A model generated the notes under the pieces. It was not told the origin of the DNA. It saw nothing but the letters and a program-made list of their open reading frames with translations, and did no database searches. The position numbers and the translations under genes were made by a program. Shown in pieces: positions 19,001-39,200 of a stretch of 64,000 nucleotides of DNA; positions within the stretch are counted from its first letter, which is position 1; every line of letters starts with the position of its first letter. This DNA comes from Ruditapes philippinarum (taxonomy: Eukaryota), in contig NW_026859100.1 of NCBI RefSeq assembly GCF_026571515.1, positions 62,001 through 126,000 on the forward strand, in the 5' to 3' direction.

Positions 19001-22000
19001 TGTGATCAGCCCTCGTTTATGTATGATTTACAGTAAAAGAAAAGTTTTGTAGTTAGTGATTGACACTGTGATTGTTGAAGTAAATCAGTATTTCCTATCA
19101 AATACACAGGTATATATAGGTATATATAGGTATATGTGTGAGTGTGTGTTCAGTAGGTCAGATATATTTTAGAAGCTTCTGCATTTCATCTGCAAAGTTC
19201 ATACAGTGTTGGCAAAACACATTCTACTGTATATATCGTTTGATTCTTGGTTTGCATTTTAAAGATATTGAATATTGTATAAGATAGTGAATTTATAGCA
19301 AAATCAATTAAAAAGATTAAGATCTCTTGATAGTTTTATCTATTTACCTTGGCTGGTTATGAAATGTTAACTGTGAAAAAGAGAATACATGTAGTCAGGG
19401 CTTCCGTTAATGGAAGTTTGGGAGTCATTTACTTCTTGATTTTTGCTTGTGTCTTCCAAAATCTAATTCTTTTCCTTCTTACCTATATAATGAGACTTCC
19501 AATATCAGAGATTTTGAAGTCTCTGACTTCCAAATTTTGGAACTTAATGGAAGCCCTGTGTAGTTAAAAAAACCAATTTACTGTTTCAATTCACAGAAAA
19601 CAATATGATTGTAATTTGTATGGTAATATTGAACTGGGACTGTGTAATTTTTTCGTAAAGGTTTTTTCGTAAGTTTTCGAAAGAAGTTAACAAGTTTACT
19701 CATTGGCTTTAAATGATAGAACTGTTCTTCTCAAGGCTATTGTTACACTATAAGTTTTAAGCTATACAAGTCATGTATCGTGATGCCATAGTTTGAAATC
19801 TTTAAGATTTACTTTGGATTCAGATTAATTAACGACTAAAGGTCATTGAATATTCAAATGTATCGGGGTCATTATTGCCAAACAATATTACCCATATATC
19901 ATAACAAGAAATTTAAGCTTAAGTTAACAGAAATAACACATGTATAGTACGGGTTGCAATGTACCTATGTCTTTTTAAAAAAAAAATTGTTTTTCAAAAA
20001 TTTTTTCAAAATGGTAATTGATAAATCAACTGATGCTCTAAGACAACCAACTGGGAGGTTTTTTTTCGCCATAAGTGGCAAAATTAAACTGAACATGCTT
20101 CATTATAAAATTAATGGTTACAAATGTACTGTAAGAAACTTTGAAATATCATGTAAAACAAGCAGGTTGTGGAAATTTTATACACATTCAAGTTGCTGAC
20201 AAATAAATGTTATTAATATTATAACTGATATAATGTATAATTATATAATATCTGAATCTTTAAAATATTCAGAATTCATAGCGTCAATTATAAATTATTA
20301 ATTATATTAAGCAGAGTATATAAATTTGTAATGATTTTGAAATTGAAAATGAGTTCATATGCTGCTGTTGTATTTTTCAGGGTCGTCGACGTTGAACAAT
20401 AAAAAGAGGAATCGTGGGATTCTTAGCTCATTTCTGTGTTGCTTTGGCAACAAGAACAATAACTCTTCAAGTGCCTATCAAGCCCCGAATGCTGAAGTAA
20501 ATGGCAATCCGCGGGATATCTCATATGTAAATATTTTCTTGTGATTAACATTTTAACCAATGAAAACTGTACATTTACTAGCAAAAGTATAGTTCTTTAG
20601 TGAAAAAATCTCCTTTGGTCATTTAATATGGGTTATAATAAAAATTTCAAAATGCCAAATTTATTTAGATCTCTTTTTCATCAATTGTTGGTCTGTGGAC
20701 CTGTTTCACTCACTTTACATTTCAATTTGTATATAAAAGTCATATATTTGCCCTTTGCAAATGTGGGCTAGGTTCTTGCAATGTTTAAATCTCTCAATTG
20801 ACAGTTTATAACATCAAGAGATGAAGGGTACAGAAAAAATGCATGGGCACAATAGGGGCTTCTTTCAGCAATACCCATTTGAGTGTCAACAAAAGTTTCA
20901 CCTTATACAAATTTGTTTGACTCTTTAGGAAAAACTGACCCTCCAGTATTAACTGATTCTCATAATTTTGTTATAATTCATATGCAAGTCCAATAAACAG
21001 ATATCATTTGGGTCAATTTATTCTAAGTTTAATTTAGAGTGTACATGTGTGTGCAAAATACTTGTTCAAAATTTTAACTGTGTTAATGTGTTGTTAATTA
21101 AGTTTCATACACTTTGTATCCGTATTTTAATGGCCCCAGCATTTCTTTAATGTCCAGTGTTACATTTATCATGTTTACTTTTGTTGTTGTTTTTATTTCA
21201 GTGTTTAATTGTTACGATTAACAATGTAACATGTTAGCTTTATTAGGTTGACTATTCGATAAGAATAAGAACTATCCTAGTCACCTGAGCGTCAGCGTAA
21301 CCATTTATGTTAAAGTTTTTGTAGCACCTCAAATATTTTCAAAATCAATTGACATATGGCATTGAAACTTTGCACACTTGTTCAACATCATGACCCCAAC
21401 ATGTAGACAGGTGACGGTAACTCTATCAAGCATTTTAACAGAATAATGCCCCTTTTTCTACTTAGAATTTACATTAAAGTTTGCATACCATTTCAGATAT
21501 TTCATATTCCATTGACATCTGGCTTTGAAACAAGTTGAAATTTTATACACTTCTTTGAGAGCATAATAGGACTCTCTTCAAGGCCTATAACTGTAACATG
21601 GATTAAAAGAAAAATTTAGCCCTACAATATAACATGTTAGATTTATTATATTTCAGAGTCCCAATGAGAAATATTTACTACCAGCAGTAAGACCGCAGGA
21701 CTCCAACAAGAAATGTGTTGTTATAGATTTAGATGAAACCCTTGTACATAGTTCATTTAAGGTAAGCTTATTTGAGGTTAACTATGATTTATGGCTGAAT
21801 TTAAAGTTAATTTAAGGTGAAAGCTGACTGAATTTACCTATAATCTAAAGCTCATTTTATGGTAAGCTATGATTTTTGGCTGAATATAATTATGGTTACC
21901 TGTGATCTAAAACTCATTTTATAATAAGCTATTATTTATGAGTTCATTTAAAGCGAAGCTATGGTCTTATTGTAGAATGAAAAGCACTCTTTGATTAATT

Positions 22001-25000
22001 GCATAATTTATGGTTAGTTATGATTTATATATATTTTTTGGGGGTAAGTTACAAATAAAAGATAAATTTATAATAAGTTATAATCAGAAGTTGCATTGAT
22101 AGGAAGCTTTGATCAATAATTGATTATGTTAAGCCTATGATTAATGGTTTGTTTATTTATAGCTTAAAATAATTTTATGGTCTACAAGCTATTTTAACTT
22201 TTATTATCGTAAAGATGCATTATTCATTTGACTGCCTTTTGCAGCTATTTTTGGGGAAAGGCCCATATTTGAATTGTGGAAAAATATTCAGAAATTGAAA
22301 TATTGTAAAAAAAGTTCAAAATCTACCTTTAACATGGCATTTTAAGGTGTTTTTCCCTGTGATGATCATGTCACCTGTCACTTCTTTTAAGAAACAAGTC
22401 AAAACAGTTGAATTTTTTCTTAGAAGTTAAAACAGTTTGATATATTAGGCAGTGATTGTTTTGTTTATTACGAAACTGGGAAAGCCGTTGTTTCCTTGAG
22501 TAAGAAACTTTACACTCATTGCTCAGTACTGGTTTGTTCAAAAACAAATTCAAGAGTGTGTCAAAAACAAATTCAAGAGTGTGTCTATAGTAAACGCAAA
22601 CTTAAATAAGTTCAGTATAAACCATACCGGTAGTTATAAATTTCAAGTTCACTTAAACTAGACTAAGACTAACTCAAAAATACAAGTTTCAATATATTTC
22701 TGGGTATATTTCTTAATAATCTTTTGCAAATCTGATTTAATCCATTATGATCAGGGCATGGTTGATCAAAGCTGTGATGAATTTTAGAACTTAAATATAC
22801 ATAAAAGCTATGATGTATCATTAAATATATTACATTTAAAATTTGCTGAATTTAGAAACTAAATAAACATGTAAACATCAAATAAGCATAGAATGTTATG
22901 GACTGTGAAATCTGCAGTGTTCACCCTTTGATGGTGACGGATTATTTTGGTGACAGATTTACGATGTAATAAATATTTCGCCAAATACACTGACGAGATC
23001 TACATTGATATGTTTTTCATCTTTTGTGTAAAAACTGTACAGTTCTTGTCATATTATTACACATATGCTGTATAAACTTATGTATATTACATCAATATCG
23101 ATGTTACACATTTTCATTTATACAGTACTCCCCTTGTGGCTGAGGGGTTGCCTTGACAAGTTGAGGCATCAGAATTGCAGCCTCTGTTTAACTGCATAAT
23201 AAATCGGTCATTTCTGGAATTTCTTTTCCAAAATCTTCAATATCCTATAATATTTGACCGTTTATAACCAGAATTTAGTATAAGTGAATGTAAATAATCT
23301 AATGTCCAAGATTTTTAAAAAAAATTACATTCTGGAAATAACGATAACCAATATATTACAATGTTGGCCGATATTAGAATATTTTGCAGGGAAAACTTTA
23401 CAATAAGACTACCTTAATACTGTACAATGTAGTACTAATTGTGAAGAGGTTGGTACTCAACTGAAGAGAGGTTTCACTTTTTTCTGTCACAATCACATAG
23501 TAATGAACAATTTTTACTTTATTTTTTATTTCAGCCAATTAGTAATGCAGAATTTTACTTTATTTTTCATTTCAGCCAATTAGTAATGTATAATTCTACT
23601 TTTTAGTCCCCTACCGGTTTACCGGAGGGGACTTTAGGTTTACCCTCCGTCCGTCTGTCCGTCTGTCCGTCCGTCTGTCCGTCTGTCCGTCCGTCTGTCT
23701 GTCAGTCCGTCAGTCCGTCCGTCCACAAAACTGGATCCCGCGATAACTTGAAAAGTACTGAAAATACTTTTATGAAACTTGGTATATGGATAGATGGCAG
23801 TATGGAGATTATGCACGTCTTTTTCTTTTCTTCCTATGTTGAAAATTCTGGTTGCTATGGCAACAAATAGGCTAAAATATGGCAAATTTTACACATAAAC
23901 TGGATCCAGTGATAACGCAAAAAGTACTGGAAATATTTTTATGAAACTTGACATATGGGTAGATGGCAGTCTTGGAATTATGCACGTCTTTTTCTTTTCT
24001 TCCTATGTTGAAAATTCTGGTTGCTATGGCAACAAATAGGCTGAAAATATGGCAAATTTTATACATAAACTGGATCCAGTGATAAAGCAAAAAGTACTGG
24101 AAATATTTTTATGAAACTTGACATATGGGTAGATGGCAGTCTTGAGATTATGCACGTCTTTTTTATTTTCTTCCTATGTTGAAAATTCTGGTTGCTATGG
24201 CAACACATATACTGAAAATATGGCAAATTTTACACATAAACTGAATCCAGTGATAACTCAAAAAGTACTGGAAATATTTTTATGAAACTTGACATATGGG
24301 TAGATGGCAGTCTTGATATTATGCATGTCTTATATGTTCTTCCTATTTTGAAAAATATCAGTTGCCTTGGCAACAAATAGGCTTAAAAGATGGCAAATAT
24401 AACAATATTTGTGATAAGTCAAAAAGAGCTGAAAATTTTTATGAAATTGCATCTTTAAGTCAAGAGTTATCTCCTATTTAAGAATTTTGCTTTTAAAATG
24501 TTATATTTTGGTAACAGGGATATTTCAAATATTAACTTTAGAGTGTCCTTCAGTCCGTCTGTCTGTCTGTTCATAAAAACTGTTTCCTGTGATCACTTTT
24601 AAAGAACTTTTCCAACAAGTTTACTTAAAATAGAGAAAAATTGAAACATAAGTGAATGGCCAATGGCCCTTCAGAATGTTGATGGGGTTCTAACCGGTAG
24701 GGGACTTATGGATTGCTTGCAATACTATGATAATTGCTTGTTATTTTTTATTTCAGCCAATTAGTAATGCAGATTTTATTGTACCGGTAGAGATAGATGG
24801 AACTGTTCATCAGGTTTATGTACTAAAAAGGCCATTTGTAGACGAATTCCTTAAAAAAATGGGAGAGTTGTTTGAATGTGTGCTCTTTACTGCTAGTCTT
24901 GCGAAGGTACGAGAAATTTTCTTACTAAATTTATTATGCTCTTGTGTTTGAATACAATGTTGGGGACTTTGGTTCCTTTCATGGGAGGGGGGTGGCTGGG

Positions 25001-28000
25001 AATTTTCAAGCTAGATTTATATGGCAGGTTGGTGGTTTTACTGATCGGGTGCACAAAATATATATCACTTAATGCAATTTATTGCTGGATGCAGAACTTC
25101 AACAATGCGTGAGCTATTTATGAACCCCAGTGTCGCAAAAAAAACAGGAAAGGAAAATATCTGTTATCTTAAGGTTGTTGATAAATAGTATTTAGTGTTA
25201 AACACATGATCGACAACTGTGTGTGTATATATGTGTTAATATACAGATAAAATTTGACAGAGGTTGTTAATCTTGTATACAGTGTATATTGAAGGTAAAA
25301 GGTCTTGTGTCCAAAAATGGGATTAAAAATAGTTCATGAATTAATTGCCTGCTTTTAAGTGACACCATTATATATGGGGACAAAAGTAAAAATTTTCCTT
25401 CTTCCTTAATGATGATATTAATTATAGAGATTCTTTATAATACAGATAGCTGGTTTGGTTTAAACATATTTATTTAAAAGCCATTGCGAAACAAGTTCTT
25501 GCAAATTATATTAACCACATTCGAGTCCGTTTACTGGAACCAACCAGTACTGGTGTCATATGAAGAAACATGGGCGAGACCCAAGTAGGGCTCGAACCTA
25601 TGATCTCTGGTTTGAAAGGCAGACACCTTAACCACTAGGCCACAATACAGATGAATTGCATATTAATGAAGATTTAATAACTAAATCTGTAGTTTATTTT
25701 ATTGTGATTTTATTGTGTTGATGTACAAAGTATTTTTCTCCAATTTTTAGCTCACCTGTCACAAAGTGACAGGGTGAGCTTTTGTGATCGCTTTTCGTCC
25801 GGCGTCCGTCCGTCCGTCCGTCCGTCGTCCGTCCGTAAACTTTTACTTTAAATGACATCTCCTCATAAACCACTAAGCCAATTTCATCCAAACTTCACAG
25901 GAATGATCCTTTGGTGGTCACCTTTAAAAATTGTTCAAAGAATTTAATTCCATGCAGAACTCTGGTTGCCATGGCAACTGAAAGAAAAAACTTTAAATAT
26001 CTTCTTTTAAAAAACCATAAGAGCTAGAGCTTAGATATTTGGCATGAAACATCTTCTAGTGAGTGTCTACCAAATTTGTTCAAAAATAAAAGCCCTGGGG
26101 TCAAAATTGGCCCCGCCCCGGGGGTCATTGATTTTCCCTATATGCATATAGTAAAAACTTAAAAAGCTTCTTTTAAATAACCCAAAGAGCTAGAGCTAAG
26201 ATATTAAGCATGAAACATGTTCTTATGGTGTCCTACCAAGTTTGTTCAAATAAAAGCCCTGGGGTCAAAATTGGTCCCGCCCGGGGGGGGGGGGGTCATT
26301 GATTTTCCCTATATGCATACAGTAAAACTTAAAAAATCTTCTTTTAAAGAACCCAAAGAGCTAGAGCTAAGATATTTAGCATGAAACATGTTCTAATGGG
26401 TGTCTACCAAGTTTGTTCAAATAAAAGCCCTGGGGTCAAAAATTGGCCCCGCCCCGGGGGTCATTGATTTTCCTTATATGCATATAGTAAAAACTTAAAA
26501 ATCTTCTTTTAAAGACTCAAAGAGCTATGGCTAAGATATTGAGCATCAAACATGTTCTAAAAGGTGTCTACTAAGTTTGTTCAAATAAAAGCCCTGGGTC
26601 AAAATTGGCCCCGCCCCAGGGGGTCATTGATTTTCCCTATATGCATATAGTAAAAACTTAAAAAATCTTCTTTTAAAGAACCAAAGAGTTAGAGCTAAGA
26701 TATTTAGCATGAAACATGTTCTAATAAGTGTCTACCAAGTTTGTTCAAATAAAAGCCCTGGGGTCAAAATTGGCCCCGCCCCAGGGGGTCATTGATTTTC
26801 CCAAGATGCATATAGTAAAAACTTAAAAAATCTTCTATTAAAGAACTCAAAGAGCTATGGCTAAGATATTTAGCATCAAACATGTTCTAATAGGTGTCTA
26901 CCAAGTTTGTTCAAATAAAAGCCCTGGGTCAAAATTGGCACCACACCCGGGGGTCATAGATTTTCCTTATATGTGTATAGCAAAAACTTAAAAAAATCTC
27001 TTTGAAAAAACCCAAATAGCTAGAGTTAAGATATTAAGCATGAAACATCTTTTAGTGAGTGTCTACAAAGTTTGTTCAAATAAAAGACCTGGGGTCAAAA
27101 TTGGCCCCGCCCTGGGGGTCATTGATTTTCTTTATATGTGTATAGCAAAATCTTAAAATCTTCTTTGAAAAAACCCAAATAGCTAGAGTTTAGATATTAA
27201 GCATGAAACATCTTCTTGTAAGTGTCTACAAAGTTTGTTCAATAAAAGCCCTGGGGTCAAAACTGGCCCGGCCCAGGGGTGTCATTGTTTTTTAACTATA
27301 TGTGTATAGTAAAAACTTGAAAAAAAATCTTCTTTTAAAAAGGCCAATGAAGCTAGAGCTTAGATGTTTAGCATGAAACATCTTATGGGTGTCTACCAAG
27401 TTTGTGCAAATAAAAGCCCTTGGGTTAAATTGGCCCTGCAACGTTGGGGGGGGGGGGGGGGGGGGGGCGACCTCAGGGCCATCATGGCCCTCTTGTTTCA
27501 TACTACCTATCACTTGTTTCCATTGCTGAAAGGTTGTCCCACTCAAAATGATTGTCTTTATTTCCCCTTCCCCTCCCCCCCCTCCCCCCCCCCAAGCCTT
27601 AACCTCAATAATGCTGATTATATACTGAAAGTAAAGGTACAGTGGTACTTAGAATACTGTAAGTTGATGTAGGTAATGTATGGAATGCATCGTGCATACT
27701 TCATAAATAACTTATTTGCTATGACTTGATAAAGGTTAAATACCAATCTGTCTAGGGTAAATATTTTGTAAAATAGCTAAGATGTCAATGTTTTCCTCCC
27801 TTTTAATGTAAACTTTAAATGTAGCCTCTTTAAATATTTAATCCTCGCATGATGCAATCTTAAAAAGGGATTAAACTCCTTAAGATTGACCGTTCCAAAT
27901 GCCTTTCCCTCTTGGATTAGCCTACGGGATAAATTTTGATATTGCACTGTTGTGTAAGTTGTAATAGTTGACGTGTTTGATATATTCACAAATATCTACA

Positions 28001-31000
28001 ACATGTTATATGTAATGACATCGTTTCCTGATTAACACTGATAAATACCACCAAACGTTATAACTACTGCACATGCATAAAAACATTGAGCTGTATAGGT
28101 GCATGCATGAAAACAGCTTTTGTGTGAGAATCACCACATGTTGTGCAGATTTACAGTTTGTTTTACCTTTTACTATTATCGATCTGTGTAGTATGTTTTA
28201 CTTTAACATAAACATACCATTGGGAAGTTATAATGGCTTTAAAAACCTTGGTGTAAAGGTTCAGTTGATCAATGCTGTAATAAAATATGAGCCGCGTCAT
28301 GACAAAACAAACATAGTGCGTTTGCGACCAGCATGGATCCAGACCAGCCTGCGCATCTGCGCAGTCTGATCAGGATCCATGCTGTTCGCTATCAGTTTCT
28401 CTACTTGTAATAGGGTTTGTAAGCAGGCTGGTCTGGATCCATGCTGGTTGCAAACCCATTATGTTGTTTTTGTCATGACGTGGCTCAAATGTATTTCTAC
28501 TGATCAGACCCATAACAGTGGATTACGATTGCTTTATGCTTTAAAGTTATTACATACATATATATAATCCAGGTGTTTTTGCACTACTTGATCTTTCATT
28601 GTTTAGAATGTTTTAAGAGCATTAATCATGATACCTTAGAAAAGAAAACACCTCCCTGCCAGAAATTATAAATACCTGTTTTATTCCTTACATTTGTATG
28701 CACCTATGGTATGGATTTTTCATTTATAATTTAAGCCTGCCTTTTCCCCTGGCCACAACTAATCTCTCTAACCCAAATTGCCTTTTATGAGTTTTGCCTA
28801 CCAATGCCTTATACTGTAACCAAAATGATTTTTGTTATATAATAAAGTTCCTTCTACCTCTTATATAAGAATTTTCCAAGTGCATATACACTTAAAGGGA
28901 ATTGACCTATAATGTTCTTAAAGGGAATTGCTCTATAATGGAAGGCCTGAAATACTATAAGTACTTATCAATATTGATAGTATCTAGTATTAGACATAAC
29001 AACAAACTTCGATAGAATTATATATGAATATTTTTGGCAAGTGTGAATTCTATACATGATCTGATATTACATATATTCATTTAGCAGATAATAAAATTGT
29101 TCTAAAACAGAATGCATGTATTATTCTTCATTTTTTAAATGTACATACAAAATCACTAAGATCTTTATCAACAGTTTGATTTTTATTCAAAGAAATATCC
29201 AAAGATACCTTTCTATTGTTTTTATCAATATTTGAATTATTTTTATCAATATTGGAATATTTGGAAAATTTGCCGATCGTAGACCAATCCACTTTAAATG
29301 GCAAATATGCCTTTGTAGACCAATCCACTTTAAAATGAATTCACTTGTATTTCATACTTCTTTTCAAATGAATTTTCTTTTATAATTTATATCTCATTTT
29401 TGCTACACAGTATGCTGACCCAGTGGCGGACCTGTTGGACAAGTGGGGAGTTTTTAGGGCGCGTTTATTCAGGGAATCATGTGTCTTTCATAGGGGTAAC
29501 TATGTCAAAGTAAGTATAGTTATTACATAGATTTGACACTTGGAAACTGATTATTAAACAAGCTGATAAATATTAAGCTGCAACTGTTGTAGCCATACAT
29601 AAATTAAAACAAGACGCTCCTTGAAGGGCGTTTCGCAGCTCTCCATTCTCCATTCGAGCCAAGTCTAACAAAGCTTGTCCATAACAGAAGTAGGCATCTG
29701 CACATTTTGTTATCTTTAATAAGTAATTGATTGATTGATTGGTTGATTGATGAATAAACAGATTGATGGATGGATCTTTGAATGATTGTGTGATTGATTG
29801 ATTGATTGATTGATCATAAACATGATAAACTGCATAATATTACATGTATATGAAAGGACTGAGTAGAAAAGACTTTGTTTTATAGCTTATCTACGAGGGT
29901 TTATATTTATCGCTATTTTATTACTTTATATACATTTTTAGTATTTGAGAATGTTGTGTTTTACATATATGACATCTGTTTGTTAAGGTACTTGTCAAAG
30001 AATGTTTTGTAATTTTAACAGTTGTCCTTCATAGAGAGGCAAAATATGTACATGTACATACAAATATATATAGAATGTTTAAAACTAGCTAAGATGAAGT
30101 ATGGAGGCTATATTTGAATATTGGAATGTTTTTCGATAGAATTTTTAATGCAATGGTAAATCAGTGATATAAACTCTAACCATGCAGGAAGCAACTGAAT
30201 CTTCCCCTGCTACCAGTGCAGACCAATATTGGCAAACACATAACGTCTGCGCTATTATCTATTTTAGTCTTATTCAGATTTACGTTGAATTTTTTTTTAT
30301 TCTGTCCAGATTGAAAGATAGACAAGTCCATTTAAGATATTTAGCAGGGAAATGGTTTAGATGAAAATGGAAAGGTTATTTTGAATGTTATAACAGAATT
30401 TTGAAGGCAATGTATTGTTTAATCATGGTCTGCACTTATTGCTATTCAGTCAGTACATATTTTGACATTTTCCCATAAAAGGATGAATGTATTTGTCCGG
30501 ATTTAAAAAAGTGACAATATTGAGTGTGGTAATGGTCCAATTATTTGGTTTATTTGAATCACATTAACTAATTAAGAATAACTAATGAAGATAATTCTAG
30601 CACACACTGACATTGCATCAAAACATATCTATGATACAGTCAAACCTTGTTTTGCTCGAACTCGGAGGGTTCAGGCAAAACTGTTTCGAGAAATCGGTAG
30701 TTCACTGTAATTAAAATGTTTACAACATAATCATGAATCAGAAAGAAAATCAGAATAAAGTCAGAATACATGTGTAGAGCTCTATATATTTATTATGTTA
30801 TAACGGATGTATATGTTAATTTCATTTTTTCAGGACTTAAGTCGACTTGGACGTGATCTAGGTCAGGTGATAATTATAGATAACTAATTTATATGTTTAT
30901 TACATTATTTTCAGGACTTAAGTCGACTTGGGCGTGATCTAAGTCAGGTGATAATTATAGATAACTGATATATATGATTATTACATATTTTCAGGACTTA

Positions 31001-34000
31001 AGTCAACTTGGACGTGATCTAAGTCAGGTGATAATTATAGATAACTGATATATATGTTTATTACATTATTTTCAGGACTTAAGTCGACTTGGGAGTGATC
31101 TAAGTCAGGTGATAATTATAGATAACTGATATATATGTTTATTACATTATTTTCAGGACTTAAGTCGACTTGGGCGTGATCTAAGTCAGGTGATTATTAT
31201 AGATAACTGATATATATGATTATTACATATTTTCAGGACTTAAGTCGACTTGGGCGTGATCTAAGTCAGGTGATAATTATAGATAACTGATATATATGAT
31301 TATTACATATTTTCAGGACTTAAGTCGACTTGGGCGTGATCTAAGTCAGGTGATAATTATAGATAACTGATATATATGATTATTACATATTTTCAGGACT
31401 TAAGTTGACTTGGACGTGATCTAAGTCAGGTGATAATTATAGATAACTGATATATATGATTATTACATATTTTCAGGACTTAAGTCGACTTGGACGTGAT
31501 CTAAGTCAGGTGATAATTATAGATAACTGATATATATGATTATTACATATTTTCAGGACTTAAGTCGACTTGGACGTGATCTAAGTCAGGTGATAATTAT
31601 AGATAACTGATATATATATGATAATTACATATTTTCAGGACTTAAGTCGACTTGGAAGTGATCTAAGTCAGGTGATAATTATAGATAACTGATATATATG
31701 ATTATTACATTATTTTCAGGACTTAAGTCGACTTGGACGTGATCTAAGTCAGGTGATAATTATAGATAACTGATATATATGATTATTACATATTTTCAGG
31801 ACTTAAGTCGACTTGGACGTGATCTAAGTCAGGTGATTATTATAGATAACTGATATATATGTTTATTACATTATTTTCAGGACTTAAGTCGACTTGGACG
31901 TGATCTAAGTCAGGTGATAATTATAGATAACTGATATATATGATTATTACATATTTTCAGGACTTAAGTCGACTTGGACGTGATCTAAGTCAGGTGATAA
32001 TTATAGATAACTGATATATATGTTTATTACATATTTTCAGGACTTAAGTTGACTTGGACATGATCTAAGTCAGGTGATTATTATAGATAACTGATATATA
32101 TGTTTATTACATATTTTCAGGACTTAAGTCGACTTGGACGTGATCTAAGTCAGGTGATTATTATAGATAACTGATATATATGTTTATTACATTATTTTCA
32201 GGACTTAAGTCGACTTGGACGTGATCTTAGTCAGGTGATTATTATAGATAACTGATATATATGTTTATTACATATTTTCAGGACTTAAGTCGACTTGGAC
32301 GTGATCTAAGTCAGGTGATTATTATAGATAACTGATATATATGTTTATTACATTATTTTCAGGACTTAAGGTAGAACGCGACACTTTGCGAACTTTAGAG
32401 TAGCGTCTTGAAAATTGGCATGCAAAAAATTGACCATATTTCTGATTGGATTTCGTTGATTTTATTTCAATAGTTTCAGCCAATTTTTGTACACATGACG
32501 TCAAAGTTGACCATCAAAGCCCGTTTTTGAACATGACGTCGTTGCGTATCCTTGGCAACTGTTACGGGTATTTTAACGCCATTGGCGGACAAAATATCTT
32601 AAATCCTACAGCATTCGACGGAAATTATTTTTTCCTTTAAGCAGATATAAAATTTATTGTTTTACGCCGAAAATTGTTTGAGAAATGGAAAGAAAATTGT
32701 CAATTTTGTGTAAAATTTGACGTTCAGTTTAGCCGCAATTTTCGGCTTTAAAGCGGCTTATTAAAAAATTCCTGAAATAAATTTTTGATTTTTTTCTTTA
32801 AGCGTCCTTTAAAATGTATATTTAGTCAAAATATCTAAACAAATTAGGGGGTCACCGACTCAATTTTTTCGGTACACATGATTTTATTTCCCCCACCCCT
32901 TTGGAAAAAAGTCACGCTATCACGGGGCGTTTGGTTTTTTGATGTTATTAAAACGATCGCCCTGTGTCAAAATCCCGCTTTTTACGGCATTTTACGCTAT
33001 TATGACCACTGCGGAAAATATTTGGATACAATAAAGGACACGGAATTCCGTATATTATAGATAGACAGGTAAAAATAAGTGAAATTTGATGTACGGGACC
33101 GTATATCATGCATATGTATACGACTAATATACCGTGATCCGTACACTCGTAATATGCGGGAACTTTGAATGAAGTTCATATTTACTACGTATTTTTTTTT
33201 AATTACACGATCAGATATTACCAAAATATGTTTTTTTTTATTCTTGTAAATACAGATTTTGTATATAAAACAGTGAATAAAGATGTACTTCAGAATTACC
33301 CACTTTCTACAAGAGGAAAGAAATAATAGTCTGATCTGACATTTGTCAGAATAACATTAAATAGTAAAACTTTGAGTAAAATGTAATATTTAACATGTAT
33401 AAAACATGTGTTTTATTAACATGTCAGTTGCATACTGATTAAATAGTTAGTGAAACATCGACAGATCCTCTACAGTGCCCATAGCTTGTACAGACAAAAA
33501 AATGACAATATATATTGAAATATCTTTATTTTGTATAAAGATTTACAACGCAACACTCCTTTGTGCAGTCAGTATCTAGCTCAGGGCCGCCGGTTTGCTA
33601 AAATCCGCAAACCTGTATTTACAGCGTTTCATTATATTTCATGTTTAAAGTACTGTTTCTAAATTTTCCTGTTCAAAATAAATTCTACCATAAATTTTGC
33701 TACACAGTGAATAATGAATATTTGCAAAGGCCGATTTGATAGTAATGTTTTTAATACAGCGTTTATGGCGAATCCTCAATTAATCATTATTTCTAACATT
33801 ATGATATTCTAAAATGATAAGCAAAACGAGAGAATATGTATTACAGATACTTGTAGAATCGAACGTGCTACATCTGTAATCCAACACCCACTGAGCTAAC
33901 GTTTCAAGCATGACTGTTTGCTTCACGCTAATATAATTGACTTAGTTTCATTTATGAACCGTATATTTTAATTTGTCAATATTTCGCCAATTCTGTCAAA

Positions 34001-36209
34001 TTGTTGCAATAGTTTTTGATTACAAGTGAGATTCAAATTCTGGTTTTTAATAGGTGAAATAAAATACATATCACTCACAGTATATCACTCATAGTGTGGG
34101 TAATGCAAAATGTATAGATTTGCAGAATTTCTTGTAGACTACGTATTAATTTATGATTGAATTTCCGTAAATTTCTAAATTTACATAAAAATATATAGTT
34201 GCTTTTTGTTCCTTAAGGCATATTTCTCGATTCAAGTTTATTAATCTTATTGTATTACAATATCAAAAAGGAACACCGCAAATGTTTACTCTCAGCTGTA
34301 TTTATTTTTGTTTGCGCAGCGTACGCGTTGCCGTTGAACGCCTGACGTCATTTTCTTTACATGCGTCTGTTTACAATTCCTTATGAAGTTATTAATCATG
34401 CTTAAAAACAAGAAAAAAAATCGTTTGTTTTTCGTACAATTTTAAGTATTTGCAATGGAACATTGCTGTAGTTGTTTTATATGTATTAGTAAAACTCTAG
34501 AACAATTCTCCTGATAAGCTGAACATTGTTGCCGCACTTTGAAGTCTCAAACGTATCTGCATACGTCGAATTTCGTTACAAAATTACTCACGTGTGGGGG
34601 AAATAAAATCACGTGTACCGAAAAAATTGAGTCGGTGACCCCCTAATTTTTTTTGTTATTTTGACTAAATATACATCTTAAAGGACGTTTAAAGAAAAAA
34701 ATCAAAAATTTATTTCAGGAATTTTTTAATAAGCCGCTTTATAGCCGAAAATTGCGGCTAAACTGAACGTCAAATTTTACACAAAATTGACAATTTTCTT
34801 TCCATTTCTCAAACAATTTTCGGCGTAAAACAATAAATTTTATATCTGCTTAAAGGAAAAAATAATTTCCGTCGAATGTTGTAGAATTTAAGATATTTTG
34901 TCCGCCAATGGCGTTGAAATACCCGTAACAGTTGCCAAGGATACGCAACGACGTCATGTTCAAAAACGGGCTTTGATGGTCAACTTTGACGTCATGTGTA
35001 CAAAAATTGGCTGAAACTATTGAAATAAAATCAACGAAATCCAATCAGAAATATGGTCAATTTTTTGCATGCCAATTTTCAAGATGCTACTCGAAAGTTC
35101 GCAAAGTGTCGCGTTCTACCTTAAGTCGACTTGGACGTGACCTAAGTCAGGTGATAATTATAGATAACTGATATATATGTTTATTACATTATTTTCAGGA
35201 CTTAAGTCGACTTGGGCGTGATCTAAGTCAGGTGATAATTATAGATAACTGATATATATGATTATTACATATTTTCAGGACTTAAGTCGACTTGGACGTG
35301 ATCTTAGTCAGGTGATAATTATAGATAACTGATATATATGTTTATTACATTATTTTCAGGACTTAAGTCGACTTGGGCGTGATCTAAGTCAGGTGATAAT
35401 TATAGATAACTGATATATATGTTTATTACATATTTTCAGGACTTAAGTCGACTTGGACGTGATCTAAGTCAGGTGATAATTATAGATAACTGATATATAT
35501 GTTTATTACATTTTTTCAGGACTTAAGTCGACTTGGGCGTGATCTAAGTCAGGTGATAATTATAGATAACTCGCCAGCTTCCTATATCTTCCATCCTGAT
35601 AATGCAGTAAGTATTCCTGCTATTTTTAGAAGCATTACTTTTGGGTTTATCTTCTTGAATGTAAACGGGAACAGGATCCCACCTCAGTCTTCGGATTCTA
35701 TCCAGCTAGCTTACTAATGATTGGTGGTCTACTCAACTGCTTGCTTGTGCCTGAAATAATGCACAGCAGGTAACGTGGTGTGTTAGTTTAAACATAGTTA
35801 TTTAAGCTTGATTGCGAAACTTATATTAATCACTTTCGAGTCCGCTTCCTGGAAACAATCCATACTGGTGTCCTATCATAAAGAAACATGGTCGTATTTA
35901 CCTCTCATTTTAGCATCAAACTTTTCATTTCTAGCATTGCACTCCTCATTTTTCTTTCGAGAAAGGTTGTTTTTATTGTGAAATTGTACTACCTTTGGTA
36001 CAATCATGTACTTCTTATTCTGGCTTTCAAGCGATAATAAACCCTTTTATATAATAATTCTTTTATTTTTACAGGTACCTTGCCAGTCTTGGTTTGATGA
36101 TATGCAAGATACTGAATTACTAGACCTTATACCATTTTTCGAAGGACTTGCTAAAGTCGATGACGTGTATTCAGTGTTACGAAATACGAACAATACGGAT
36201 TCTTCCTAG
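9684..36209 (+). CDS. CTDSPL: CTD small phosphatase (SCP; CTDSP1/CTDSP2/CTDSPL co-orthologue), 265 aa; join(9684..9759,20381..20526,21657..21761,24757..24906,29411..29509,35520..35606,36075..36209)
   Basis: All introns are GT-AG with compatible phases (1,0,0,0,0,0). N-terminus [16 protein letters not shown], di-Cys motif FLCCF, HAD catalytic motif [12 protein letters not shown], then [67 protein letters not shown] and SWFDD; all are hallmarks of the FCP/SCP family. Confidence 0.96.
12302..12327. repeat. (CA)n microsatellite
   Basis: Direct read; another (CA)n at ~16021-16053. Confidence 0.9.
14411..14778. mobile_element. TTAA-target MITE (TIR AGCWGCAYGCCTC...)
   Basis: TTAA|agctacatgcctc ... 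ggaggtaagctgct|TTAA; related to 56156-56465 and ~48870-49200. Confidence 0.7.
15276..15545. mobile_element. TTAA-target MITE (TIR GGTAGTCTTAC)
   Basis: TTAA|ggtagtcttactttaatgctttcc ... ggaaagcattacagtaagactacc|ttga; a related right end lies at ~23404-23417. Confidence 0.7.
16090..16238. repeat. ~33-bp minisatellite (aatgaaatcYtctttggggtttaggatcc...)
   Basis: About four degenerate tandem units. Confidence 0.7.
18302..18416 (+). CDS. Candidate alternative first coding exon of CTDSP ([39 protein letters not shown])
   Basis: ATG-initiated 38 codons ending AAAG|gtagtt in phase 1, the phase that exon 2 (20381) requires. No homology support. Confidence 0.3.
18605..18800 (+). mobile_element. tRNA-derived SINE
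   Basis: A box TGGCCGAGTGG and B box GGTTCAAACC, followed by a gtactggttggttccag...aacgga body shared with the SINE at 25470-25643. Confidence 0.7.
20381..20526 (+). CDS. CTDSPL: CTDSP coding exon 2
   Basis: tttttcag|GG TCG...; [22 protein letters not shown]...[11 protein letters not shown]|gtaaat. An alternative in-frame gtaaat donor at 20497 is also possible. Confidence 0.85.
21241..21600 (+). mobile_element. Degraded HINE-like element
   Basis: Residual 5' palindrome-like start, short gcgtca tract and ~170-bp repeated ttgaaactt...cacactt core. Confidence 0.4.
21657..21761 (+). CDS. CTDSPL: CTDSP coding exon 3 (catalytic DLDET motif)
   Basis: tttcag|[35 protein letters not shown]|gtaagc. 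Confidence 0.96.
21750..22200 (+). repeat. Degenerate ~30-bp minisatellite resembling the exon 3 donor junction
   Basis: AGTTCATTTAAG|GTAAGCT is echoed as aagttaatttaaggtgaaagct, aagctcattttatggtaagct, aactcattttataataagct, agttcatttaaagcgaagct and others. Confidence 0.55.
23509..23590 (+). repeat. Two tandem copies (~41 bp) of the exon 4 acceptor plus the first 13-16 nt of exon 4
   Basis: ttattttttatttcag-ccaattagtaatgcag (23519-23550) and tatttttcatttcag-ccaattagtaatg (23561-23588) match the true junction at 24741-24772. Confidence 0.85.
23603..24727 (+). mobile_element. Non-autonomous Helentron-type element (HINE-like), ~4 internal ~170-bp repeats
   Basis: 5' palindrome agtcccctaccggtttaccggaggggact, (GTCC/GTCT)n tract at 23646-23724, core repeats beginning aaactggatcc at ~23728, 23897, 24067 and 24238, 3' subterminal repeat accggtaggggact plus short hairpin. 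Confidence 0.82.
24757..24906 (+). CDS. CTDSPL: CTDSP coding exon 4
   Basis: tttcag|[50 protein letters not shown]|gtacga. Confidence 0.96.
25470..25643 (-). mobile_element. tRNA-derived SINE
   Basis: Minus strand A box TGGCCTAGTGG and B box GGTTCGAGCCC; body ccagtactggttggttccagtaaacggactcg. Confidence 0.72.
25747..27497 (+). mobile_element. Non-autonomous Helentron-type element (HINE-like), ~9 internal ~165-bp repeats
   Basis: 5' palindrome agctcacctgtcacaaagtgacagggtgagct, (GTCC)n tract, nine aaaagccctgggg-containing units, 3' stem-loop agggccatcatggccct. Confidence 0.85.
28288..28487. mobile_element. Palindromic MITE copy with a deletion in the right arm
   Basis: tgagccgcgtcatgacaaaac ... 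gtcatgacgtggctca; same family as 1992-2228. Confidence 0.85.
29411..29509 (+). CDS. CTDSPL: CTDSP coding exon 5
   Basis: acacag|[33 protein letters not shown]|gtaagt. Confidence 0.96.
29728..29814. repeat. (GATT)n imperfect microsatellite
   Basis: Direct read. Confidence 0.8.
30805..35570 (+). repeat. 80/81-bp tandem array made of the exon 6 acceptor (29-30 nt of intron) plus the first 51 nt of exon 6; 25 units, the last being the real exon
   Basis: Exon-like starts (cag|GACTTAAG) at 30834, 30915, 30995, 31076, 31157, 31237, 31317, 31397, 31477, 31557, 31639, 31720, 31800, 31881, 31961, 32041, 32121, 32202, 32282, 32363 (split by the transposon), 35199, 35279, 35360, 35440 and 35520. Confidence 0.95.
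32370..35120. mobile_element. Non-autonomous DNA transposon, 2751 bp, ~527-bp TIRs, TTAA TSD (Kolobok-like)
   Basis: TTAA (32366-32369)|GGTAGAACGCGACACTTTGCG ... CGCAAAGTGTCGCGTTCTACC|TTAA (35121-35124). TIRs span 32370-32897 and 34594-35120. Removing the element restores repeat unit 20 exactly. No transposase ORF inside. Confidence 0.92.
35520..35606 (+). CDS. CTDSPL: CTDSP coding exon 6
   Basis: ttttttcag|[29 protein letters not shown]|gtaagt; the only array unit that continues into SPASY and a consensus donor. Confidence 0.93.
36075..36209 (+). CDS. CTDSPL: CTDSP terminal coding exon 7
   Basis: tttacag|[44 protein letters not shown](TAG). Confidence 0.95.
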
Positions 36210-39200
36210 TATTCGCTCCATGTATATTATATATTGTGTAGTGTACGGGTGTATGAAGTCAGTTTTATATTTGAGCAAATATTTCACTGGATGCCAGGAC
36301 TTCATCGATGAAATATCCCTCGGGGGAAAATTTTTGCAGAAGAAAAAAATATTTACGACTTTTAAAAAGATTTTATTTATGGAGTTAAATCTGTGGTCGG
36401 ACATTATTGAAATAATGCAAACAATTATAGCATTTTGTTATTTCTTGGCCGAGTTATTTTTGGTTTCTATAAATAGCTTGGAAGAAGTGACGTGTTTTTG
36501 TAAATGTTAATCAAGAATAACTATAGTCATAGACTAATAGAGGTGAAGTTATATCAAACCGTATAAATGAAATAATAGGATGAAAATAGGAAAATTGCAG
36601 TAATAGTTTACTCCGGGATAAAGAATCCGTATGGAGATATTAATAATGAAGCCTTATGTATAAAGAAGCCCCGTTACAAGTGATCACTGATAACAATAAC
36701 ATGACATTCAACTATGAATCAATTTATGTCGAAAACATTGTAGGTATATGAAAATATGTATAAAGAAAACAGAAGTGACGTCTGCCAAATAGTTAAAAAG
36801 GCTGAATTGCATTTGTGTGAGTGTGTAAGTTCTATGTAAAAAAAAATATTGGTTTGCATATGTTAAGCTCCTCAAGGAGAAAAACACGGACTATTGTTAG
36901 AGAATACATTCTCAAATGTTGCTTAACAGAAATAGCCTAAATTATTACTGTGTTATCTTTCGCCAGTTTTTGAATAAAGTGACTCTGATTGAGTTCATTT
37001 TTTAAGGAAATAAAATTTATTTAAATTAAGAAATATGTTTATATATTTAAAAAAGTAAAATATGAATTTTGAAAATTTAGGTGGATTTTATTCTAGTAAA
37101 TATTTGATTTTGATGCGAGAAGTTATATTATTCTAGTAAAAAGTTACTAACAAATTATGTAAAATATATTTATTGGTATAGAAGTCTGTAAAATTTTGTG
37201 GTTTTTATTGATTTTTTTGCTTTCCATGCAACTGGATATAGAATACGAAAAAGAAAAATAACTCTTGTCTGAATAATATTTGAACCTTACATAGTTACTT
37301 CCCATTGTTTTGCTATGAAATAAAATTTACCGATAAAAATATGATACATTCATATTAACATGACGATTTTCATTGTTTTTATTCTAGAATTTTATTTTAA
37401 GGCATATTTACTGTTCATTAGTAAATTTCCACGGGGTTTTGATATATATACATAAAAAAATTTATATTTTGAATAATTTACAGTGTAACTTGGTATATGT
37501 TGCATTTACATTATTAATATCATTTTAGCTAAAATTTGTACTAGAATTTATAATGTCATTGGAAGCACTTATAACAGCATTGTTCTTTTGTTGAAATATG
37601 CGTTTATTTGATCTCTCTTTGTTTTTTTTCATCTAGTTTCACAAAGTAGCTTTTAAAAAGCTTGACAAAAAAAAGTCTTGAGTTACAAATAATTTTTTTG
37701 TTTTTTGTTTTTGGGATACCTCATTTAATTAGGACTGTCAAAATCTTAAAGAAGTGATCTATTTTATATGAAAGTATTAAGAACTTGCTTTATGCTGCAA
37801 TAAAATATAAAATGTCCGATTCTATCGAGTATTTGTAAATTTCATATTTTATACTTTTAAAGCAGAGTTTTAGGGTTTTTTCCTCCAGAAATCAAAAGAT
37901 TTTATTTGTTCATGTTTTTGTTCTTCCAGAAGATTGGTAAAGGACTTGACAATATTTTTTTTTTAATGAAAATAGTCAATTTTTTTTAACTTAAATGGTA
38001 AAAACTCACAATTTATATACCCAGTGTTGCGATGAAATCAATGAAAATGTAATGCCATGGACTACTTTCTGTCCCATTAAGCCCCAGTGCTGTAATTTCA
38101 TTACTATGTTACATTTTGCCATTGGATTTTCTTTCCTCACAAAGTATTACAATTTTCTTTGTCTTATTCATCTTTTATACTACAGTATTTTTTTTTCTAT
38201 TTTTTGAATGAAATATTTTGTAATATGTTTTGACTTACGGGCCTATAACATACTACATACAGAATTGAGATAACACCTACAAAAAAATAACATCTAAAAC
38301 ATTATTAAAAAATATTGTAATTTTTGGTTGATTTTAGGATTAAAAGGGGTCTCTATATTGTTTTTGCATTATATTGTCGGCAAATTTCATTTTCTACCTG
38401 AATTCTTTAAATTAGACAAATATATGAAACAATTTTATGTAAAAAAACGTATATAGCATTTAGAGAAAGATGGAGGTCGCTTTAACCTAAAAATTACTGC
38501 ACTGGAGGTAAACATTTGTGGACATAGTACTTCCTGTTGAATAAACTGTACTTTATTTTCTTTCATTATAAACCATGGAGGCTTCATATTTTTATACAAG
38601 ATCATGTTACATGTATATATGCAAAAATTTAAAAAAGCAAGTTACAATATAGTGTGTAGTCATGTAACCATGTTATAATTATGTTATATACCGATCAATC
38701 ATGTTATAACTGCTATATACTATGAGACTGGGTTATGTTTTCATGTTATAATTGAGATATAGCACAGTCATGTTTGGTTGTTTATTTTATAATTATTTTT
38801 TTATTTTTGTTTTGTTTTTTTCTAACAAATGTTTCAGTCATTAACACGTAATGCATATTTTTTTTCTCATTCGCTTTTTGGATAAACAAATTACACCATT
38901 TTTTACAGGGGTGCATTTAGCATTGTTAAATAAAGACCACAGCAGTAACAAAAAAACTCTAATCCATTATGCATAATTGGATGAATTAATAAGTCATGAA
39001 ATCATAGTTTCTGATCTGTTTCATCTGCGAATGTTCGGAAATTAAAACATTCAATTTTTTAGCTGTGTAAACAGTTAACATGTGACAATGCCCAGGAATT
39101 CATTCTTTGTATCACAATCTATTGTTGTCTTTGGAATCACACACTGTGCTTGAAATTGGGACAAATGCCTTGCTCATTTTCTCAAATTCATTAAAGAGTT

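What the first reader, a model, noticed from the sequence alone, without database searches (positions are those of the whole stretch)
30805..35606. A splice-acceptor satellite: 24 stop-terminated decoy copies of an essential exon's 3' splice site precede the single real exon
Seen: each 80/81-bp unit is a branch-like CTGAT, a T-rich tract, CAG, then the first 17 codons of CTDSP exon 6 (consensus [17 protein letters not shown]), followed immediately by an in-frame stop (TGA; TAA in unit 1). Only unit 25 (35520) continues into [12 protein letters not shown] and a GTAAGT donor. The unit ends match an ATAAC microhomology shared by the original intron (30800-30804) and the exon (...GATAAC), which explains the seeding duplication. 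Only the first and last units have an uninterrupted TTTTTTCAG; all internal copies have an A-interrupted tract (ATTTTCAG). Inference: the spliceosome must skip ~24 near-identical acceptors, so correct splicing must rely on exon definition from the downstream donor. Any decoy use with read-through creates a premature stop and likely NMD, so copy number could act as a heritable tuning knob on phosphatase dosage. The weaker internal tracts may reflect selection against decoy use.
Basis: partly seen in the sequence, partly recalled or inferred. Interest (0 to 1): 0.88.

Follow-up and report, generated by a model that had tools for sequence, protein, structure and literature searches.

The report
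Splice-acceptor minisatellite in a bivalve phosphatase gene
An intron of a mollusc's only CTD-small-phosphatase gene holds 24 tandem dead copies of the next exon's splice acceptor and first 17 codons; this kind of repeat is already known from amphioxus as a "mirage", and nothing here shows that the copies are used.

Summary
Twenty-five 80-82-bp units each carry a branch-like CTGAT, a T-rich tract, CAG and the first 51 nt of exon 6 of a single-copy CTDSP/CTDSPL-like gene. Units 1-24 run into an in-frame stop. Only unit 25 (35520) continues to a GTAAGT donor.

- Unit 20 is split by a 2,751-bp young, high-copy transposon with 526-534-nt inverted ends and a TTAA target duplication.
- Units 8 and 16 carry additional CGA>TGA stops.
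- Intron 3 of the same gene holds a second, small array that copies the exon 4 acceptor.

This is the known "mirage" class: minisatellites built from intron/exon boundaries, described in amphioxus Adh3, globin, TnC and PGBD5, where splicing stays normal. The scan had already reached this class on other DNA of this genome (s1-793113, s1-803853).

The origin by slippage at the ATAAC repeat, followed by concerted evolution, is supported. The dosage-knob and selection ideas are not supported. The A-interrupted tract is one shared mutation, and the decoy tracts are no weaker than the gene's real exon 3 acceptor.

RNA reads barely covered the gene, so decoy use is untested. No read or contig spans the array, so the copy number rests on the assembly.

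The parts
29411..29509 (+). Exon 5 of the CTDSP-like gene (YADPV...GNYVK), with donor AAA|GTAAGT
   Evidence: Pfam NIF profile positions 66-99.
30800..30804 (+). Intronic ATAAC. It forms a 5-bp direct repeat with the ATAAC that ends the duplicated exon segment, so it is the likely slippage point of the first duplication.
   Evidence: The TRF array starts at 30800.
30805..32369 (+). Decoy units 1-19 and the start of unit 20, up to its TTAA. Each unit has about 29-31 nt of intron end (CTGAT, T-rich tract, CAG) plus 51 nt of exon 6 start, then a stop.
32370..35120 (.). Non-autonomous foldback transposon inserted in unit 20. Its terminal inverted repeats are 526-534 nt long and 98% complementary. 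TTAA is duplicated at 32366-32369 and 35121-35124. The family is young and high-copy.
   Evidence: at least 921 candidate copies, 96-99% identical; 8 of 8 other copies are flanked by TTAA. The 24 uninterrupted units serve as empty sites.
35121..35490 (+). The rest of decoy unit 20, and decoy units 21-24
35491..35519 (+). Intron-derived part of unit 25, which is the authentic 3' splice site region. The branch-like CTGAT straddles the end of decoy 24. This unit has an uninterrupted T6 followed by CAG.
35520..35606 (+). Authentic exon 6 ([29 protein letters not shown]), 87 nt, phase 0 at both ends
   Evidence: Pfam NIF positions 100-128, E 2.4e-8. PDB 2hhl CTDSPL residues 129-157, E 1.3e-13.
35607..35612 (+). 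GTAAGT donor of intron 6
36075..36209 (+). Last coding exon ([10 protein letters not shown]...TDSS, then stop)
   Evidence: It is the only match in the assembly.
23498..23602 (+). Second, small boundary repeat in the same gene: 2.5 units of 41 bp, made of the end of intron 3 plus the first 13-22 nt of exon 4. The decoy acceptors are at 23535 and 23576.
   Evidence: family D5; alignment A1.
24757..24906 (+). Authentic exon 4. It is separated from its two decoy copies by a 1,102-bp transposon at 23605-24706.
   Evidence: (I1).

Best explanation
This is a 'mirage'-type minisatellite, a by-product of mutation and not a device. An 80-bp segment made of the last 29 nt of intron 5 and the first 51 nt of exon 6 was duplicated in tandem, probably by slippage or template switching between two ATAAC pentamers 80 bp apart. 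Unequal exchange or replication slippage then expanded and homogenised it to 25 units. Every new copy lands upstream of the rest of the exon. Only the last unit is therefore contiguous with codons 18-29 and the strong GTAAGT donor, and it remains the real exon. The other 24 units lie inside intron 5 (now 6,010 nt), are removed with it, and decay as non-coding DNA. A TTAA-targeting foldback transposon later landed in the TTAA of unit 20. Shown here: the structure, its uniqueness to this locus, the decay of the copies, the transposon insertion and the gene's identity. Inferred: the slippage origin; that the real acceptor wins because it alone lies 87 nt upstream of a consensus donor (exon definition), perhaps helped by its T6 tract; and that decoy use is rare and has little effect on fitness.
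For: Structure. ATAAC at both ends of the unit. The unit occurs only at this locus in the 1.41-Gb assembly. Concerted evolution with a divergent edge: internal units differ by a mean of 3.1 positions and unit 1 by 7.8, and near neighbours are more alike than distant ones. This is the pattern reported for amphioxus BflGb6 mirages (PMC3087553). No coding constraint on the copies: there are 2 nonsense and 5 missense changes, and 4 of the 9 variable exon-derived sites lie in the two CpGs. The real copy matches human CTDSPL closely. A second boundary repeat at exon 4 of the same gene and earlier notes on six similar arrays elsewhere in this genome point to a general mutational habit of this genome. 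Precedent: amphioxus Adh3, TnC, globin and PGBD5 mirages duplicate splice sites yet give normal mRNAs. The human F7 IVS7 minisatellite has 5-9 identical functional pseudo-donors that stay silent. The gene is single-copy, intact and highly conserved, so it must be spliced correctly. Short-read contigs of run X1 cover variant-specific units 1-5 and 22-25 at about single-copy depth.
Against: There is no transcript evidence either way. RNA depth was about 1 on exon 6 and about 0.1 on exon 7, and no joints were seen. The decoys look competent: YTNAY with its A at -27/-28, no AG before the CAG, and tracts as good as the real exon 3 acceptor. Units 21-24 lie only 167-407 nt upstream of the real donor, so some decoy use cannot be excluded. 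The real acceptor's T6 against the A-interrupted tract of all 23 internal decoys also fits selection for a stronger real site. No read or contig spans the array, so the copy number rests on the assembly. An independent run (X6) shows a different left junction.
Confidence: 0.8

Rival explanations
1. The array is a functional decoy-acceptor sink: a fraction of transcripts splice exon 5 to a decoy, acquire a premature stop and are degraded by NMD. Copy number would then tune the dosage of the phosphatase, and selection would have weakened the internal tracts.
For: Every decoy has a formally complete 3' splice site module and is followed by an in-frame stop. Only the real unit and unit 1 have T6. 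The gene is single-copy, so dosage could matter. Minisatellite-borne splice sites are used in human IFI6 (Turri 1995, as cited in PMC4526556).
Against: No decoy junction was seen, although the depth was too low to count as a test. The A in the tract is one inherited change, not 23 independent ones. Decoy tracts are not weaker than a real acceptor of the same gene. The copies decay freely and a transposon sits in one of them. The same kind of array recurs at other exons and genes in this genome. Known mirages do not alter splicing.
Confidence: 0.07
2. Assembly artefact: the true locus has one or a few units, and the assembler inflated a short repeat.
For: The assembly is fragmented into 15,874 contigs. 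No contig or read spans the array. Independent run X6 lays almost nothing on units 1-19 and has a contig that joins 30776 to unit-type sequence through 21 other letters. There is no second haplotig for comparison.
Against: The units differ at 19 alignment columns in an ordered pattern rich in neighbour similarity, not in identical blocks. A transposon with a clean TTAA duplication sits inside one unit. X1 short-read contigs carry unit-specific variants at about single-copy depth. A 2-kb array is easily spanned by long reads. De Bruijn contigs collapse such arrays, so their silence says little.
Confidence: 0.07
3. The copies are used as in-frame 33-nt microexons. Each unit has CAG|GTGATA 33 nt after its acceptor, so chains of [11 protein letters not shown] inserts could be spliced in.
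For: The site matches the donor consensus at 7 of 9 positions and is in frame.
Against: The same site exists in the real exon and must be ignored there. The intron to the next unit would be only 47 nt. Units 8 and 16 carry stops within the 33 nt. Inserts would fall in the middle of the phosphatase fold. No joints were seen in the array.
Confidence: 0.02

Closest known systems
'Mirage' minisatellites of amphioxus: Adh3 (Canestro et al. 2002, cited in PMC3087553), globins BflGb6 and BflGb9 (PMC3087553), TnC and PGBD5 (PMC3902484)
   Same: Both are head-to-tail repeats whose unit spans an intron/exon boundary and carries the splice signal. BflGb6 copies the 3' end of an intron plus the 5' part of the next exon, exactly as here. 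The authentic copy sits at the edge of the array. Evolution is concerted with the edge units left out. Unit sizes of 10-160 bp are reported.
   Different: This one is in a mollusc, not a cephalochordate. It has 24 extra copies, against 3-6 in BflGb6. It is interrupted by a transposon. Normal splicing and length polymorphism were shown there by RT-PCR and by comparing haplotypes, but could not be tested here.
Human F7 intron 7 37-bp VNTR (PMC1557585)
   Same: A minisatellite whose edge unit spans an exon boundary, so that 5-9 identical and demonstrably functional pseudo splice sites sit next to the real one and stay silent. Only the copy contiguous with the exon is used.
   Different: The F7 sites are donors, not acceptors, and the real site is the first, not the last. 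The F7 mechanism (5'-to-3' scanning) was shown by mutagenesis and would, if applied to acceptors, predict use of the wrong copy here.
Human IFI6 (6-16) 12-nt minisatellite that provides splice donors (Turri et al. 1995, as cited in PMC4526556)
   Same: The repeat units carry splice sites derived from the exon boundary.
   Different: In IFI6 two downstream units are actually used and give in-frame isoforms. Here any use of a copy gives a stop, and no use was observed.
Intron creation by tandem duplication across AGGT (Rogers model; Hellsten et al. 2011, PMC3265369)
   Same: A local tandem duplication that copies splice signals within a gene.
   Different: No new intron or exon is formed here. 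The copies stay inside the old intron.

Membership tests
Mirage (exon-boundary minisatellite) | The repeat unit spans an intron/exon boundary and contains the splice signal | tested here: met
   Each unit has 29-31 nt of intron end with CAG plus the first 51 nt of exon 6.
Mirage (exon-boundary minisatellite) | A head-to-tail array contiguous with the authentic boundary, with the authentic copy at one edge | tested here: met
   There are 25 units with a period of 80-82 nt, and unit 25 is the real exon. Contiguity is broken only by a later transposon.
Mirage (exon-boundary minisatellite) | Concerted evolution within the array, with the edge units left out | tested here: met
   Internal units differ by a mean of 3.1 positions and unit 1 by 7.8. 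Differences rise from 2.5 to 3.3 between lag 2 and lag 8.
Mirage (exon-boundary minisatellite) | Length polymorphism or instability between haplotypes | tested here: inconclusive
   There is no second haplotig. Short contigs cannot size the array. X6 shows a different left junction.
Mirage (exon-boundary minisatellite) | Regular splicing is not disturbed | tested here: inconclusive
   RNA depth was about 1 on exon 6 and there were no joints. The only support is indirect: the gene is single-copy, intact and conserved.
NMD-coupled decoy or poison splice sites that regulate dosage | The decoy sites are used in a measurable share of transcripts | tested here: inconclusive
   No exon 5-decoy junctions or loose ends appeared at the decoys, but coverage was only a few reads.
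NMD-coupled decoy or poison splice sites that regulate dosage | The stop-containing isoform rises when NMD is blocked, and the level depends on copy number | not testable with these tools
   This needs experiments on tissue or cells.
NMD-coupled decoy or poison splice sites that regulate dosage | Signs of selection on the decoy elements | tested here: not met
   The copies carry nonsense, missense and CpG changes and a transposon. The tract difference is a single shared change.
CTDSP/SCP small CTD phosphatases (Pfam NIF, PF03031) | The NIF domain is covered, and the DxDxT motif is present | tested here: met
   Five exons, searched one by one, cover profile positions 1-16 and 22-159. DLDETLV lies in exon 3.
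CTDSP/SCP small CTD phosphatases (Pfam NIF, PF03031) | Closer to the SCP subfamily than to other NIF proteins | tested here: met
   For exon 4, CTDSPL, CTDSP2 and CTDSP1 score E 1e-25, against 1e-4 for CTDNEP1. For exon 6 the values are 1e-13, against 1e-5 for CTDNEP1 and TIM50.
TTAA-target DNA transposon (piggyBac- or Kolobok-type, non-autonomous) | TTAA target-site duplication and terminal inverted repeats | tested here: met
   TTAA stands on both sides here, with a single TTAA in the 24 uninterrupted units. TTAA flanks 8 of 8 other copies. The TIRs are 534 nt long and 98% complementary.
TTAA-target DNA transposon (piggyBac- or Kolobok-type, non-autonomous) | A related transposase that assigns the superfamily | not tested
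   No long open frame is present in the element, and no autonomous partner was sought.

The most novel reading that the evidence does not exclude
The array is a natural 25-way competition between near-identical 3' splice sites that leaks. A copy-number-dependent share of transcripts from the animal's only CTDSP gene would splice to a decoy and be destroyed. Array length, which is variable between individuals, would then set phosphatase dosage, and the single T/A difference at position -7 would keep the real site ahead.
Probability: 0.06. Interest if true: 0.7.

Novelty: new member of a known kind. Interest (0 to 1): 0.33.

Why it matters
As it stands, this is one more example, and a large one, of a repeat class described so far only in amphioxus. 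Together with the second array in the same gene and the scan's earlier notes, it suggests that boundary minisatellites are common in this bivalve genome. That matters in three ways. For annotation, the decoy copies can mislead gene predictors and read mappers. For models of intron and exon birth by local duplication, it adds a case outside chordates. For splicing research, it offers a ready-made natural substrate: 24 apparently competent acceptors upstream of the real one in an essential-looking single-copy gene. This is the acceptor-side counterpart of the human F7 donor model. It would bear on dosage regulation only if decoy use were shown.

Tried and rejected
Reads. Two raw RNA runs and two DNA contig sets were laid on 30600-36400. 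The gene was barely sampled: exon 6 had a depth of about 1 and exon 7 about 0.1, either from low expression or from silent filtering of conserved reads. Nearly all reads fell on the transposon and on a repeat in intron 6. There is therefore no verdict on splicing, and none on array length. Both read tools are now spent.

Other copies and haplotypes. A search of the assembly with both flanks and with the unit found only this locus. A scan of public metagenome contigs for the decoy junction found nothing.

RNA structure. Folding the last two units plus exon 6 gave z = -1.97, a weak signal, and no obvious masking of the decoys.

Literature. The original mirage paper (Canestro 2002, PMC117041) is not held, so it is cited only through PMC3087553. 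No mollusc mirage turned up in the library.

Joined model. Exons were searched one by one by reference, so the species' annotated full-length protein and other assemblies of the locus could not be reached.

Rejected readings:
- Alternative or mutually exclusive exons: the copies lack codons 18-29 and a donor, and each ends in a stop.
- A dispersed satellite or transposon cargo: the unit is unique to this locus.
- The immediate stop as a designed feature: AT-rich intron sequence gives stops anyway, with the next in-frame TAA 11 codons on.

Full report
WHAT IS THERE

Tandem Repeats Finder reports an 80-bp array in two blocks, 30800-32370 (19.5 copies, 96% matches, score 2802) and 35120-35571 (5.6 copies). 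The motif CAG|GACTTAAG occurs 25 times, spaced 80-82 nt apart, with one gap of 2,836 nt.

Each unit has a 29-31-nt intron-like part: TGATATATATG, a T-rich tract, then CAG. This is followed by 51 nt that translate to [17 protein letters not shown]. In units 1-24 the next codon is a stop, TAA in unit 1 and TGA in the other 23. Unit 25 (35520) alone continues [12 protein letters not shown] to GCA|GTAAGT. The decoy junction occurs 23 times against 0 expected by chance. ATAAC stands just before the array (30800-30804) and at the end of every exon-derived part.

(a) The gap in the array is a 2,751-bp insertion (32370-35120) in unit 20. It has terminal inverted repeats of 526-534 nt, 98% complementary. 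TTAA stands on both sides of it, whereas the 24 uninterrupted units have a single TTAA in GACTTAAGTCG, so they serve as empty sites. Eight of eight other copies fetched from the genome are flanked by TTAA with a variable base before it. The family has at least 921 candidate copies, 96-99% identical. It is a young, non-autonomous, TTAA-targeting foldback element, and it arrived after the array had formed.

(b) Units 8 and 16 carry an additional CGA>TGA stop.

(c) Intron 3 of the same gene holds a second, smaller boundary repeat of 2.5 units of 41 bp (23498-23602). Each unit is the end of intron 3 plus the first 13-22 nt of exon 4, which puts decoy acceptors at 23535 and 23576. A 1,102-bp transposon (23605-24706) separates them from the real exon 4 at 24757.

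THE GENE

Searched one by one by reference, the exons at 21657-21761, 24757-24906, 29411-29509, 35520-35606 and 36075-36209 each hit Pfam NIF (PF03031), at consecutive profile positions 1-16, 22-63, 66-99, 100-128 and 129-159.

Exon 4 is about 92% identical to human CTDSPL (PDB 2hhl, E 8.6e-26) and exon 6 about 86% (E 1.3e-13). Both are far closer to CTDSPL than to CTDNEP1 or TIM50. Exons 4 and 7 have no other match in the 1.41-Gb assembly. This is therefore the only SCP-type gene, it is intact and strongly conserved, and it must be spliced correctly. The organism is a mollusc by the run labels, and bivalve-like by earlier notes.

HOW THE ARRAY AROSE AND BEHAVES

The unit is unique to this locus, so it arose locally and is not a dispersed satellite. 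The 5-bp direct repeat ATAAC at both ends of the founding 80-bp segment fits slippage or template switching as the first step. This step is inferred.

The units are very alike. Internal units differ at a mean of 3.1 of about 81 positions. Near neighbours are more alike than distant ones, with 2.5-2.7 differences at lags 1-3 against 3.1-3.3 at lags 5-8. The left edge unit is the outlier, at 7.8 differences. This is concerted evolution by unequal exchange with the edges left out, the same pattern described for amphioxus BflGb6.

The exon-derived parts of the copies carry 2 nonsense and 5 missense changes, and 4 of the 9 variable sites lie in the two CpGs. They are not under coding constraint.

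SPLICE-SITE QUALITY

Every decoy has a YTNAY match (CTGAT) with its A at -27/-28, no AG before the CAG, and 12-14 pyrimidines in the 20 nt from -23 to -4, with a T run of 4. The real site differs by a single base, T instead of A at position -7, which gives T6. The gene's authentic exon 3 acceptor has a T run of only 3 and 12 of 20 pyrimidines. The decoys are therefore not visibly disabled.

The A in the tract is shared by all 23 internal units and absent from both edges. The simplest account is one mutation that spread by homogenisation, not repeated selection. Purifying selection that keeps the real site strong would give the same picture, so the pattern does not discriminate between the two.

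What does set the real site apart is that it alone lies 87 nt upstream of a consensus donor. Exon definition is established knowledge, but it was not tested here. Units 21-24 are only 167-407 nt from that donor, so leakage cannot be excluded. Units 1-20 are more than 3 kb away because of the transposon.

READS

One call was allowed. Raw RNA runs X22 and X24 gave a depth of about 1.6 and 0 on exon 6, and about 0.1 on exon 7. There was one partial read in the decoys and no joints or loose ends in the array. Decoy use is untested. Reads piled up on the transposon family and on a repeat at 35644-36031.

DNA contigs of X1, which may be the source sample, cover variant-bearing units 1-5, 10-11 and 22-25 at about the single-copy depth (2-8 against 3.9). 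This supports the distinctness of several units but not the count. Independent run X6 covers the real exon and has one contig that joins 30776 to unit-type sequence through 21 other letters. This may be a different left-boundary allele and remains unexplained.

COMPARISON WITH WHAT IS KNOWN

A literature search shows that tandem minisatellites spanning intron/exon boundaries are known as 'mirages' in amphioxus.
- They occur in Adh3, in the globins BflGb6 and BflGb9, in TnC and in PGBD5. BflGb6 has 150-160-bp units made of the intron 3' end plus the exon 5' part, with 6 and 3 units in its two haplotypes.
- RT-PCR there shows normal mRNAs, and length instability is reported.
- The human F7 intron 7 VNTR is the donor-side analogue, with functional but silent pseudo-sites.
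- In IFI6, minisatellite donors are in fact used.

After I had reached this class, the scan's own notes showed that two earlier follow-ups on other windows of this genome had filed six similar acceptor arrays as mirages. I did not re-examine those loci.

The defining structural features are met here. Polymorphism and undisturbed splicing could not be tested.

VERDICT

This is a real, locus-specific, large boundary minisatellite in a conserved single-copy phosphatase gene. It is a new member, in a mollusc, of a known kind. The regulatory and selective claims are unsupported, and parts of them are undercut by the data. The array is a good natural substrate for studying how a 3' splice site is chosen, but nothing here shows that it has a function.

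Noticed in passing
window 23498-23602, with the real exon 4 at 24757: A second boundary repeat in the same gene. It has 2.5 units of 41 bp that copy the exon 4 acceptor and its first 13-22 nt, giving decoy acceptors at 23535 and 23576.
   Followed up: yes
window 23605-24706: A 1,102-bp transposon with a perfect 15-nt terminal inverted repeat (AGTCCCCTACCGGTT). It carries a (CCGT/CTGT)n tract and four copies of a 171-bp satellite, and it sits between the exon 4 decoys and the real exon 4.
   Followed up: partly
window 32370-35120: The foldback element in unit 20 belongs to a young family with at least 921 candidate copies, 96-99% identical. RNA reads of run X22 cover it on both strands (depth 5-47), so the family is transcribed somewhere in the genome.
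   Followed up: partly
window 35644-36031 (intron 6): A very high-copy dispersed repeat. Contig word depth reaches about 50,000 in X6 and 3,400 in X1, RNA depth is 20-30 in X22, and there are sharp loose ends at 35818, 35854 and 35858.
   Followed up: no
window 30776-30833 versus run X6: An independent DNA run has a contig (depth 9.8) that leaves the reference at 30776, carries 21 other letters, and resumes in unit-type sequence (ATAAC|TGATATATATG...). This may be a different left-boundary allele of the array. The same run's contig over the real exon aligns only from 35513, with 4 unaligned letters before it, so the T6 tract may not be fixed.
   Followed up: no
window 25986-27436 and 4882-5265: A 165-168-bp satellite, with 8.8 copies in intron 4 of the phosphatase gene. 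It also occurs in reverse orientation near 4.9 kb (2.3 copies), so it is probably associated with a transposon.
   Followed up: no
window about 30420-30540: A short dispersed repeat in intron 5 with 1,937 candidate matches in the genome at 78-88% identity. It looks like a SINE or MITE.
   Followed up: no
window 35520-35552 and the same positions in every unit: GACTTAAGTC is a perfect palindrome, and each unit has CAG|GTGATA 33 nt after its acceptor. This is an in-frame potential donor that the real exon must also ignore.
   Followed up: partly
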